A DNA stretch of 63,752 nt, the filler included, from Octopus bimaculoides (lineage: Eukaryota), in assembly GCF_001194135.2 (NCBI RefSeq). It is 8 parts of 8 records of this genome, joined end to end, with 100 filler letters (N's around TTAATTAATTAA, not from the genome) between each part and the next. Parts side by side here need not be neighbours in the genome. Positions count along the whole stretch, not along the records: positions 43,709 to 52,665 come from NC_068992.1; 7 more parts are not named here. One strand, 5' to 3'. The notes under the pieces are model-generated. The model made no database searches, was not told where the DNA came from, and worked only from the letters and a program-made list of their open reading frames with translations. A program made the position numbers and the translations under genes. Of the stretch, positions 44,511 to 45,843 are shown in pieces (position 1 is the stretch's first letter; each line of letters opens with the position of its first letter).

Positions 44511-44911
44511 GCGGAGGGGTCGTCTTTGCCAGTTCTCTTTTGATATTAAGCTGTAATTGTTGGTATTTGTAAAGAAATTAGGAACTGTGAGAACTTTGAA
44601 GTTCAAAGTGAAATTGAGTTTTACTTAGTGTTAAGGTTTGAGGTGAGGTTTCGAGTGAAATGATTTTAATATAACTCGTGAAGGACAGTAAGGAATCGAG
44701 TGGGGGTAGTGTTTACTAATCTTGAAGAGCAGAGCCGTTGTAGTAGCAGTCAAAGAAAGACAGAGGAGAATCTAGATTGTACCTTAGTTGAAAATGTGGT
44801 GAAGTGGGGGTTGGATATTTCAGACCCAGCCTTTGTAGAGTGTTTGCAAGAGTAGCAACTGCAGGTATGTGAGTGGTGCTCCCAAATGTATGACTGGTAC
44901 ACCCAGGTATG

Positions 44912-45073
44912 CATATTTCATTTGGTGTAGGAGTCAGGGTATTCTGAGTATCGTCGTGGTATACCTGCTAAACCTAAAAAATGTTGTGGGAAGAAAGTGA
45001 AGTTTACTCCAATAAATATTATATAGAAGTGAGATTTAGTATATTGTTGATTTAAGGATAAACCTGTAATTAG
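44912..45073 (-). pseudogene. cox1: NUMT: mitochondrial cytochrome c oxidase subunit I fragment
   Basis: Invertebrate mitochondrial-code translation [54 protein letters not shown] contains the hallmark [17 protein letters not shown]. Confidence 0.95.
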
Positions 45074-45084
45074 AGCAGCACTCA

Positions 45085-45275
45085 CAGATATGTGAAGAGT
45101 ACTGCCAAATATGTAAAGAATACTCCTAAATATAAAAGTAATTCTCTCCGATCTGTTAGTCGTACTCCCAGATATGTAAGTATTGCTCCCAGATATGTAA
45201 GTATTGCTCCCAGACATGTGAACAATACTCCCAAATATATAACTGATACTGTCAAATATGTAAAGTGTACGCCCA
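45085..45275. repeat. Diverged minisatellite, unit about 21 bp
   Basis: (g/t)t(a/g)ctcccagatatgtaagta units, at least two near-identical. Confidence 0.8.
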
Positions 45276-45843
45276 AAAGTTTGAGCAGATCTTAAATGTG
45301 GATCTTACCAGTTCTTTAAACACAGAGAGAAACAGCGACATATGTGTATTATTGTATTATATTCAAATAAGTCATACATTAGGAAGCACTACTCACATAC
45401 CTGCTGTTGCTACTCATGCAAACACTCTACAAAGGCTGGGTCTGAAATATTCAACCCCCAATTAGTTTAAATTTTTGTTTGGAATCAATAAGTTCTAACA
45501 AACCTGTAAGTTTCAAATTCTTATTTCTTAAAAATCTTAACTCTGTGAGAAATTTTGGTGACTAATTTCGTATTTAACGCCGAAATTTTATTTAGAAGTT
45601 GTCAATTCCTCAGGGATATATTATCAGAAGAGGCCATATTGTGAGACATCAAATGTCGTGGAAAATGAGAAGTTTGGTAAAGTTTCTATTATTCTTGGTC
45701 AACTTATTTTTACTGGGCTGGAATATCGCTTGTTACCTAATCATAGTTCTATCTTTTGATTGCCAATTCCTTTTTTCTTCTCTTTCTCTTCGACGGCAAA
45801 AGTCTGCGATAAACTGGCATCCTTTATCTTGTTAGAATAAAAG

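What the first reader, a model, noticed from the sequence alone, without database searches (positions are those of the whole stretch)
44805..45460. TIR-bounded element carrying a piece of mitochondrial cox1
Seen: TIRs of about 90 bp enclose a 21-bp subterminal repeat array, interrupted at about 44912-45073 by a frame-intact cox1 segment of about 54 codons. Inference: either mtDNA was patched into a break inside the element, or the element captured the fragment and mobilises it (Pack-type transposon amplifying a NUMT). The second case would give a multicopy cox1 pseudogene that could confound barcoding or eDNA assays, and an antisense or sense mito-like nuclear RNA source.
Basis: partly seen in the sequence, partly recalled or inferred. 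Interest (0 to 1): 0.8.

Follow-up and report, generated by a model that had tools for sequence, protein, structure and literature searches.

The report
Mitochondrial cox1 scrap inside a transposon relic
A 160-base piece of the mitochondrial cox1 gene sits cleanly inside the short-repeat array of a small inverted-repeat transposon relic, most likely an ordinary one-off patch of a chromosome break with stray mitochondrial DNA (a NUMT).

Summary
Arms 44802-44895 and 45370-45463 form a 94-nt inverted repeat, 93% complementary. A 21-bp tandem array runs out of the left arm and is interrupted. The interrupting DNA is a cox1 fragment on the minus strand (Pfam COX1 E=1.6e-13; residues 399-452 of solved COX1 structures). 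It is open in the mitochondrial code and has an in-frame TGA in the standard code.

New here: deleting exactly 160 nt (44912-45071) puts the two array parts back in one 21-bp register and rebuilds a good unit. So the mtDNA went into an array that already existed, with no net loss of target, as in NHEJ capture of NUMTs. The fragment has Glu where 165 of 167 COX1 sequences have Asp. It is the only mitochondrial piece in the 2.2-kb contig. A candidate 8-10-bp target duplication (9/10, P about 0.005-0.016) and the array next to one arm suggest a Mutator/Rehavkus-like non-autonomous element.

Whether the composite ever moved (the Pack-type idea) could not be tested, because no other copy was reachable in any collection. 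The barcoding worry does not apply: the fragment lies about 500 nt downstream of the Folmer region. In a fold it sits in the loop, not the stem. Ordinary; low interest.

The parts
44784..44793 (.). Candidate left target-site duplication TTAGTTGAAA
   Evidence: 9/10 direct match to 45462-45471. P about 0.005 (shuffled flanks) to 0.016 (random window pairs) for a match this good in the search space. Only a candidate: it lies 8-12 nt outside the start of the inverted repeat.
44794..44801 (+). Unpaired terminal bases ATGTGGTG between the candidate TSD and the left TIR
   Evidence: No counterpart at the right end. Either a small terminal gain or loss, or a sign that the TSD candidate is a chance match.
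44802..44895 (+). Left terminal inverted repeat (94 nt). The outer ~60 nt are unique sequence starting (AAGT)GGGGGTTGGATATTTCAGACCC; the inner ~34 nt are already 21-bp units
   Evidence: 93% to the right arm, E=1.3e-35; for the unit register.
44862..44911 (+). Left part of the 21-bp array: two full units plus the first 8 nt (CAGGTATG) of a third, cut by the insertion
   Evidence: A PSSM built from the right-hand units scores this stretch 46.7 bits in phase 0, against -19 for the next best phase; register listing.
44912..45071 (-). Inserted mitochondrial DNA (NUMT): cox1 codons for COX1 residues ~399-452, 160 nt. cox1 homology may run 2 nt further to 45073, overlapping the array (possible 2-nt microhomology). 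GC 32%
45072..45277 (+). Right part of the 21-bp array: the last 13 nt of the cut unit, then ~9.4 units (consensus CAGATATGTAAATAATACTCC). Units at 45169 and 45190 are identical
45278..45369 (+). Internal non-repeated, AT-rich stretch (GC 30%); no protein-family match
45370..45463 (-). Right terminal inverted repeat (94 nt); carries only ~1.5 inverted 21-bp units
45462..45471 (.). Candidate right target-site duplication TTAGTTTAAA (or 8 nt, AGTTTAAA, 45464-45471, directly after the TIR)

Best explanation
This is a non-autonomous DNA transposon relic, about 510 bp before the event, with 94-nt terminal inverted repeats and a 21-bp minisatellite next to one arm. It sits in a transposon-rich, non-coding stretch. 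Later a double-strand break inside the minisatellite was sealed by end joining, with a stray 160-nt piece of mitochondrial DNA (cox1, antisense to the + strand) as filler. No target DNA was lost or gained on balance. The result is a short, single, non-functional NUMT. It has no start codon, has an in-frame TGA in the nuclear code, and carries at least one replacement at a near-invariant residue.

Shown:
- the anatomy of the element;
- the cox1 identity of the insert;
- the clean in-register insertion;
- the absence of other mitochondrial pieces nearby.

Inferred:
- that the inverted-repeat structure is a transposon;
- that the repair route was NHEJ;
- that this is a one-off event at this locus.
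For: - TIRs, array and cox1 identity.
- Register test: the left array has a sharply defined phase (46.7 bits against -19). (45085-44862) mod 21 = 13 = 160 mod 21. Among deletions of 150-171 nt, only 160 is in phase, and it also gives the best rebuilt unit, CAGGTATG|AGAGCAGCACTCA, at 13.3 bits.
- The length of cox1 homology (159-162 nt) agrees with 160.
- Glu sits in SEYPD where 165 of 167 retrieved COX1 sequences have Asp, consistent with nuclear decay and not with reads from a working mitochondrial gene.
- The insert has lower GC (0.32) than the TIRs (0.43-0.48).
- A Pfam scan of all six frames (mitochondrial code) of the N-free contig 43709-45907 finds COX1 once and nothing else.
- Literature: numts enter natural chromosome breaks by NHEJ, and 54% of integrations show no deletion (PMC2567098).
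- No transposase or other coding capacity in the element.
Against: - Copy number of the element and of the cox1-bearing form in the source genome is unknown. The 'one-off' part rests on prior expectation, not on a test.
- The organism's own mitogenome was not available, so the divergence and age of the NUMT and its exact ends could not be measured.
- The TSD candidate is offset from the left TIR by 8-12 nt, so the transposon reading lacks a clean TSD.
- The Asp-to-Glu change is a single site.
- The piece comes from a gapped draft scaffold (four N runs), so read-level support for the junctions is unknown.
Confidence: 0.72

Rival explanations
1. Pack-type capture with later mobilisation. The same filler-DNA event happened in a still-mobile non-autonomous element (possibly Mutator/Rehavkus-like). 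A transposase supplied in trans then moved or amplified the composite, giving a small family of cox1-bearing copies.
For: - The TIRs are still 93% matched and would form a 94-bp stem.
- There is a candidate 8-10-bp TSD.
- MULEs have long TIRs and 8-11-bp TSDs and tend to acquire host gene fragments. Rehavkus elements have a 9-bp TSD, 26-400-bp TIRs and a minisatellite before one TIR (PMC6446971).
- TE-linked duplication of NUMTs has been reported in fig wasps (PMC7600805).
Against: - No second copy of the element or of either junction was found in the 9-kb piece, in metagenome, viral or prokaryote contig collections, or in the protein collection. None of these collections appears to hold the source genome, so this is absence of data, not a negative test.
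- The prior is low. A random NUMT has a substantial chance of landing in a repeat in a repeat-rich genome, whereas amplification of a NUMT by a DNA transposon is at best rare.
Confidence: 0.06
2. Assembly artefact. Abundant mitochondrial reads were wrongly joined into a nuclear repeat during short-read assembly, and no such insertion exists in the animal.
For: The piece is a draft scaffold with four N gaps. The insert lies inside a low-complexity tandem array, where assemblers have trouble.
Against: - The insert is flanked on both sides, within one N-free contig, by the two halves of one repeat unit in exact register. A graph mis-join would need shared k-mers at both ends, and at most 2 nt are shared.
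- The fragment carries Glu at a position where 165 of 167 COX1 sequences have Asp, so it is probably not a copy of the working mitochondrial gene.
Confidence: 0.06
3. The inverted repeat is not a transposon but a local inverted duplication (for example fold-back repair). The cox1 piece was captured in the same or a later repair event.
For: Only one instance of the repeat is available. The TSD is imperfect and offset. The minisatellite is strongly asymmetric between the arms.
Against: - The arms end sharply at GGGGG.../...CCCCC, with unrelated flanks.
- The 9/10 flanking direct repeat is unlikely by chance (P about 0.005-0.016).
- The layout of long TIR plus subterminal minisatellite matches described element types (PMC6446971).
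Confidence: 0.12

Closest known systems
NUMT (nuclear mitochondrial DNA segment) integrated at a double-strand break by non-homologous end joining
   Same: A short, single mtDNA fragment flanked by nuclear sequence. It is not translatable in the nuclear code. It was inserted without net loss of target and with at most 2 nt of microhomology, which is the pattern reported for primate numts (PMC2567098; review PMC2820518).
   Different: Nothing essential. The only particular feature is the target, the minisatellite of a TIR element. That target is what makes the clean insertion visible without an empty-site allele.
Mutator-like / Rehavkus-type non-autonomous TIR elements
   Same: Long TIRs (94 nt), a candidate 8-10-bp TSD, a minisatellite adjoining one TIR and no coding capacity. 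PMC6446971 lists MULE TSDs of 8-11 bp and long TIRs. For Rehavkus it lists a 9-bp TSD, TIRs of 26-400 bp and a minisatellite before the 3' TIR.
   Different: There is no transposase to place it. The TSD is imperfect and offset by 8-12 nt on one side. Rehavkus is listed only from arthropods and annelids in that paper. The superfamily is therefore a lead, not an assignment.
Pack-MULE / Pack-type transposons (non-autonomous elements carrying captured host gene fragments)
   Same: A foreign gene fragment lies between intact TIRs of a non-autonomous element.
   Different: Pack elements are defined by transposition of the captured fragment, with several copies or polymorphic insertions, and they usually carry nuclear gene fragments. 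Here only one copy is known and the fragment is mitochondrial.
Foldback (FB) elements
   Same: Long inverted termini that contain short tandem subrepeats.
   Different: In FB elements both arms consist largely of the subrepeat arrays in inverted orientation. Here about 12 units lie on one side in one orientation and only about 1.5 inverted units on the other.

Membership tests
NUMT | Significant homology to a mitochondrial gene | tested here: met
   Pfam COX1 E=1.6e-13, above the gathering score. COX1 chains of solved structures, E=1e-22, residues 399-452.
NUMT | Flanked on both sides by non-mitochondrial (nuclear) sequence in one contig | tested here: met
   Both flanks are halves of one 21-bp repeat unit of the TIR element. 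A six-frame Pfam scan of 43709-45907 in the mitochondrial code finds no other mitochondrial gene.
NUMT | Not a working gene: truncated and unreadable in the nuclear code | tested here: met
   Only 53 of about 510 codons, no start codon, and an in-frame TGA in the standard code. Glu at a site where 165 of 167 sequences have Asp.
NUMT | Differs from, and can be dated against, the organism's own mitogenome; junctions supported by reads | not testable with these tools
   No cephalopod or other close cox1 DNA was reachable. The best protein identities were 78-80%, to unnamed metagenome fragments. No reads were available.
Class II TIR transposon (non-autonomous / MITE-like) | Terminal inverted repeats | tested here: met
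   94 nt, 93%.
Class II TIR transposon (non-autonomous / MITE-like) | Target-site duplication directly flanking the TIRs | tested here: inconclusive
   TTAGTTGAAA / TTAGTTTAAA match 9/10, P about 0.005-0.016. But the left copy lies 8-12 nt outside the left TIR. Directly adjacent 2-10-mers do not match better than AAGT/AATT.
Class II TIR transposon (non-autonomous / MITE-like) | Multiple dispersed copies in the genome | not testable with these tools
   No further copy in the piece or in the metagenome, viral or prokaryote contig collections. The source genome is not in the collections.
Mutator / Rehavkus superfamily | DDE transposase of the MULE type (PHD finger in Rehavkus), or TIR similarity to an autonomous member | not testable with these tools
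   The element has no coding capacity and no TE consensus library was available.
Mutator / Rehavkus superfamily | TSD of 8-11 bp (9 bp in Rehavkus), long TIRs, minisatellite next to one TIR | tested here: inconclusive
   A 94-nt TIR and a minisatellite are present. The TSD candidate is of the right length but imperfect and offset. Criteria taken from PMC6446971.
Pack-type transposon | Foreign gene fragment between the TIRs | tested here: met
   cox1 fragment at 44912-45071, inside the TIRs.
Pack-type transposon | The same captured fragment at two or more loci with different flanks and TSDs (evidence of transposition after capture) | not testable with these tools
   No other copy was reachable.
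Foldback element | Both arms built mainly of tandem subrepeats in inverted orientation | tested here: not met
   About 12 units in + orientation on the left side, against about 1.5 inverted units in the right arm.

The most novel reading that the evidence does not exclude
The composite is, or was, a mobile Pack-type element: a Mutator/Rehavkus-like non-autonomous transposon in a mollusc that captured a mitochondrial cox1 fragment as filler DNA and then spread it, creating a dispersed family of identical-junction NUMTs.
Probability: 0.05. Interest if true: 0.5.

Novelty: new member of a known kind. Interest (0 to 1): 0.17.

Why it matters
As it stands this is one more short NUMT, with little consequence:
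- It lies outside the barcode region.
- It cannot be translated.
- It sits in the loop of any hairpin transcript, not the stem.

Its small merit is methodological. Because it landed in a phased minisatellite, the insertion can be shown to be clean (no net target loss) without an empty allele.

If the composite proved to be multicopy, it would be a rare animal example of a DNA transposon carrying organelle DNA. It would also bear on how NUMT 'bursts' arise.

Tried and rejected
1. Identifying the cox1 donor.
- Two protein searches, with the table-11 ORF and with the mitochondrial-code peptide, gave only unnamed metagenome COX1 fragments at 78% identity or less over the whole fragment.
- The tool listed no hit longer than about 1.76 times the query, so full-length annotated COX1s never appeared.
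- An exhaustive HMMER search of cluster representatives gave at best 80% identity. The cluster look-up returned no names. The best hits read like arthropod sequences, on my own impression.
- A degenerate DNA pattern that demands the fragment's own 14-residue N-terminal peptide found nothing in metagenome or viral contigs.
- So 'octopod' is not verified by any tool. From my own memory only, the SINE-like repeats with (AAT)n tails at 49.9-50.8 kb resemble the abundant octopus SINE.

2. Finding other copies of the element.
- A 25-nt TIR core found nothing in metagenome, viral or prokaryote genome contigs.
- Ten ORFs of the piece were looked up by exact sequence and none is in the collection.
- A concatenate of all six-frame TIR and internal peptides had no hit at E<=1.

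3. Other scans.
- An Rfam scan of the piece gave only sub-threshold miRNA 'hits' on microsatellites.
- No tRNA genes were found.

4. Rejected readings.
- Foldback element: the arms are not symmetric arrays.
- piggyBac or Harbinger assignment from the termini: there is no TTAA or TWA duplication next to the TIRs.
- A source of cox1 double-stranded RNA: the fragment lies in the loop.
- A barcode confounder: the fragment is in the wrong part of the gene.

Full report
**Observation.** The piece 43709-52665 was read and scanned for repeats.

- Inverted repeat: the longest one that is not a microsatellite has arms at 44802-44895 and 45370-45463. It is 94 nt long, 93% complementary and ungapped, with 474 nt between the arms. 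blastn gives E=1.3e-35. A 25-nt core occurs only at these two places, with zero expected from shuffles.
- Tandem array: Tandem Repeats Finder reports a 21-bp array at 45080-45277, with 9.4 copies and 69% matches. The same unit, in the same orientation, makes up the inner third of the left arm and continues to 44911.
- cox1: between the two array parts, the minus strand translates in the invertebrate mitochondrial code to [53 protein letters not shown] without a stop. The standard code gives an in-frame TGA. The peptide matches Pfam COX1 (E=1.6e-13, above the gathering score). It also matches COX1 of solved structures at residues 399-452 (E=1e-22).

**What the insertion looks like.** A position matrix built from the nine right-hand units scores the left-hand units 46.7 bits in one phase and below zero in all others. 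The left and right parts are out of register by 13 nt, and 160 mod 21 = 13. Among deletions of 150-171 nt starting at 44912, only 160 nt restores the register. It also gives the best-scoring rebuilt unit, CAGGTATG|AGAGCAGCACTCA, at 13.3 bits.

The secure cox1 homology spans 159 nt (44915-45073), plus up to 3 nt at the left. The residue before Leu is Ala where 97 of 123 COX1 sequences have Pro.

So the foreign DNA is 160 nt (44912-45071), with up to 2 nt (45072-45073) readable either as cox1 or as array. The array existed first. The mtDNA went into it with no net loss or gain of target, unless a whole number of units was lost, which has a chance of about 1 in 21.

This is the signature described for numts captured at natural chromosome breaks by end joining, where 54% of events show no deletion (PMC2567098).

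**Is it a real nuclear copy?**

- In the motif RRYSDYPD the fragment has Glu, where 165 of 167 retrieved COX1 sequences have Asp. This fits relaxed constraint and argues against stray reads of the working gene. It is one site only.
- The insert has 32% GC, against 43-48% in the TIRs.
- A Pfam scan of all six frames of the N-free contig 43709-45907 in the mitochondrial code finds COX1 once and nothing else. It is a single short fragment, not part of a larger mitochondrial block.
- An assembly mis-join would need shared k-mers at both ends, and would have to land in exact repeat register by accident. I give that reading about 6%.

**What the host structure is.** The arms end sharply at GGGGGTTG.../...CAACCCCC, preceded and followed by AAGT/AATT.

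No clean duplication directly abuts them. A 10-nt direct repeat, TTAGTTGAAA (44784-44793) / TTAGTTTAAA (45462-45471), matches 9/10. A match that good arises in 0.5% of shuffled flanks and 1.6% of random window pairs in the same search space. On the left it is separated from the inverted repeat by 8-12 unpaired bases.

The element has no protein-family match. These features are those listed for Mutator-like elements and especially Rehavkus (PMC6446971):

- long TIRs;
- a candidate TSD of 8-10 bp;
- a minisatellite against one arm.

This is a lead, not an assignment. There is no transposase, no family consensus and only one copy. It is not a Foldback element, since about 12 units lie on one side and about 1.5 inverted units on the other.

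**The Pack-type question.** The step the two hypotheses share, capture of mtDNA at a break inside the element, is supported. What separates them is whether the composite later moved. That needs other copies, and none could be reached:

- the TIR core is absent from metagenome, viral and prokaryote genome contigs;
- ten ORFs of the piece are not in the 15-billion-protein collection;
- the chimeric ORF has no counterpart;
- six-frame TIR peptides have no hit.

These collections evidently do not hold the source genome, so this is missing data, not a negative result. On priors I put the Pack reading at about 5-6%. NUMTs often fall in repeats, while TE-linked NUMT duplication is known but uncommon (PMC7600805; PMC2820518).

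- Barcoding: the fragment covers COX1 residues about 399-452, roughly nt 1195-1356 of the gene. By established knowledge, the Folmer region and the common mini-barcodes lie at about nt 40-700. Standard barcoding or eDNA assays cannot amplify this fragment, whatever its copy number.
- RNA source: in an RNA fold of the element the TIRs form a stem of about 94 bp (z = -20 against shuffles), and the cox1 piece lies in the loop. A read-through hairpin would not yield cox1 double-stranded RNA.

**Donor species.** I could not name it. The closest proteins were unnamed metagenome fragments at 80% identity or less. A lineage-specific degenerate pattern found nothing. The 'octopod' label is supported only by my recollection that the SINE-like repeats with (AAT)n tails at 49.9-50.8 kb resemble the abundant octopus SINE.

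**Verdict.** The best explanation, at about 0.72, is an ordinary short NUMT patched cleanly into the minisatellite of a non-autonomous TIR transposon relic. It is a new member of a known kind and of low interest (0.17). The decisive test is a genome-wide search with the TIR, the two junctions and the predicted empty form, plus comparison with the organism's mitogenome.

Noticed in passing
window 43900-44540, minus strand: Frameshifted ORF remnants (e.g. ...NKTIAHIVNECPRLAQNQYKFWRHDEALETLW... and ...NKPDLVVLDKVNYMCFITDVACPFDTRIVQKEGGKIDIY...). From memory they resemble the C-terminal part of a non-LTR retrotransposon (LINE) ORF2. The 3' end would run into the (AT)n/(GT)n tract at 43709-43767. 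Pfam finds nothing.
   Followed up: partly
window 49931-50800: At least three or four SINE-like repeats in the same orientation. They share ...GGCACAAGGCC...GTCGATTA.ATCGACCCCAGTA... and two end in long (AAT)n tails (50142-50289, 50389-50411). No tRNA gene was detected. From memory they resemble the abundant octopus SINE.
   Followed up: partly
window 45169-45210: Two adjacent 21-bp units of the array are identical (CAGATATGTAAGTATTGCTCC), while the array as a whole is only about 69% self-similar. This suggests a recent unit duplication or conversion after the array had diverged.
   Followed up: no
window 49297-49452 and 51136-51214: Two more minisatellites: a 44-bp unit x3.6 at 96% identity inside a long CT-rich tract, and a 30-bp unit x2.6 at 79%.
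   Followed up: no
window 45908-46277, 47383-48173, 49502-49866, 51822-51840: Four runs of N (370, 791, 365 and 19 nt). The piece is a gapped draft scaffold, and most gaps are bordered by microsatellites.
   Followed up: yes
window 48170-48470, 51840-51960, 43710-43790: Rfam 'miRNA' matches (mir-3149, mir-297, mir-466 and others) all lie on AT/GT/CATA microsatellites and fall far below the gathering scores. They are composition artefacts.
   Followed up: yes
tool behaviour: the search for homologous proteins listed no hit longer than about 1.76 times the query (174 aa for a 99-aa query, 97 aa for a 55-aa query). Short gene fragments therefore never retrieve full-length annotated proteins, which is why the cox1 donor could not be named.
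   Followed up: no
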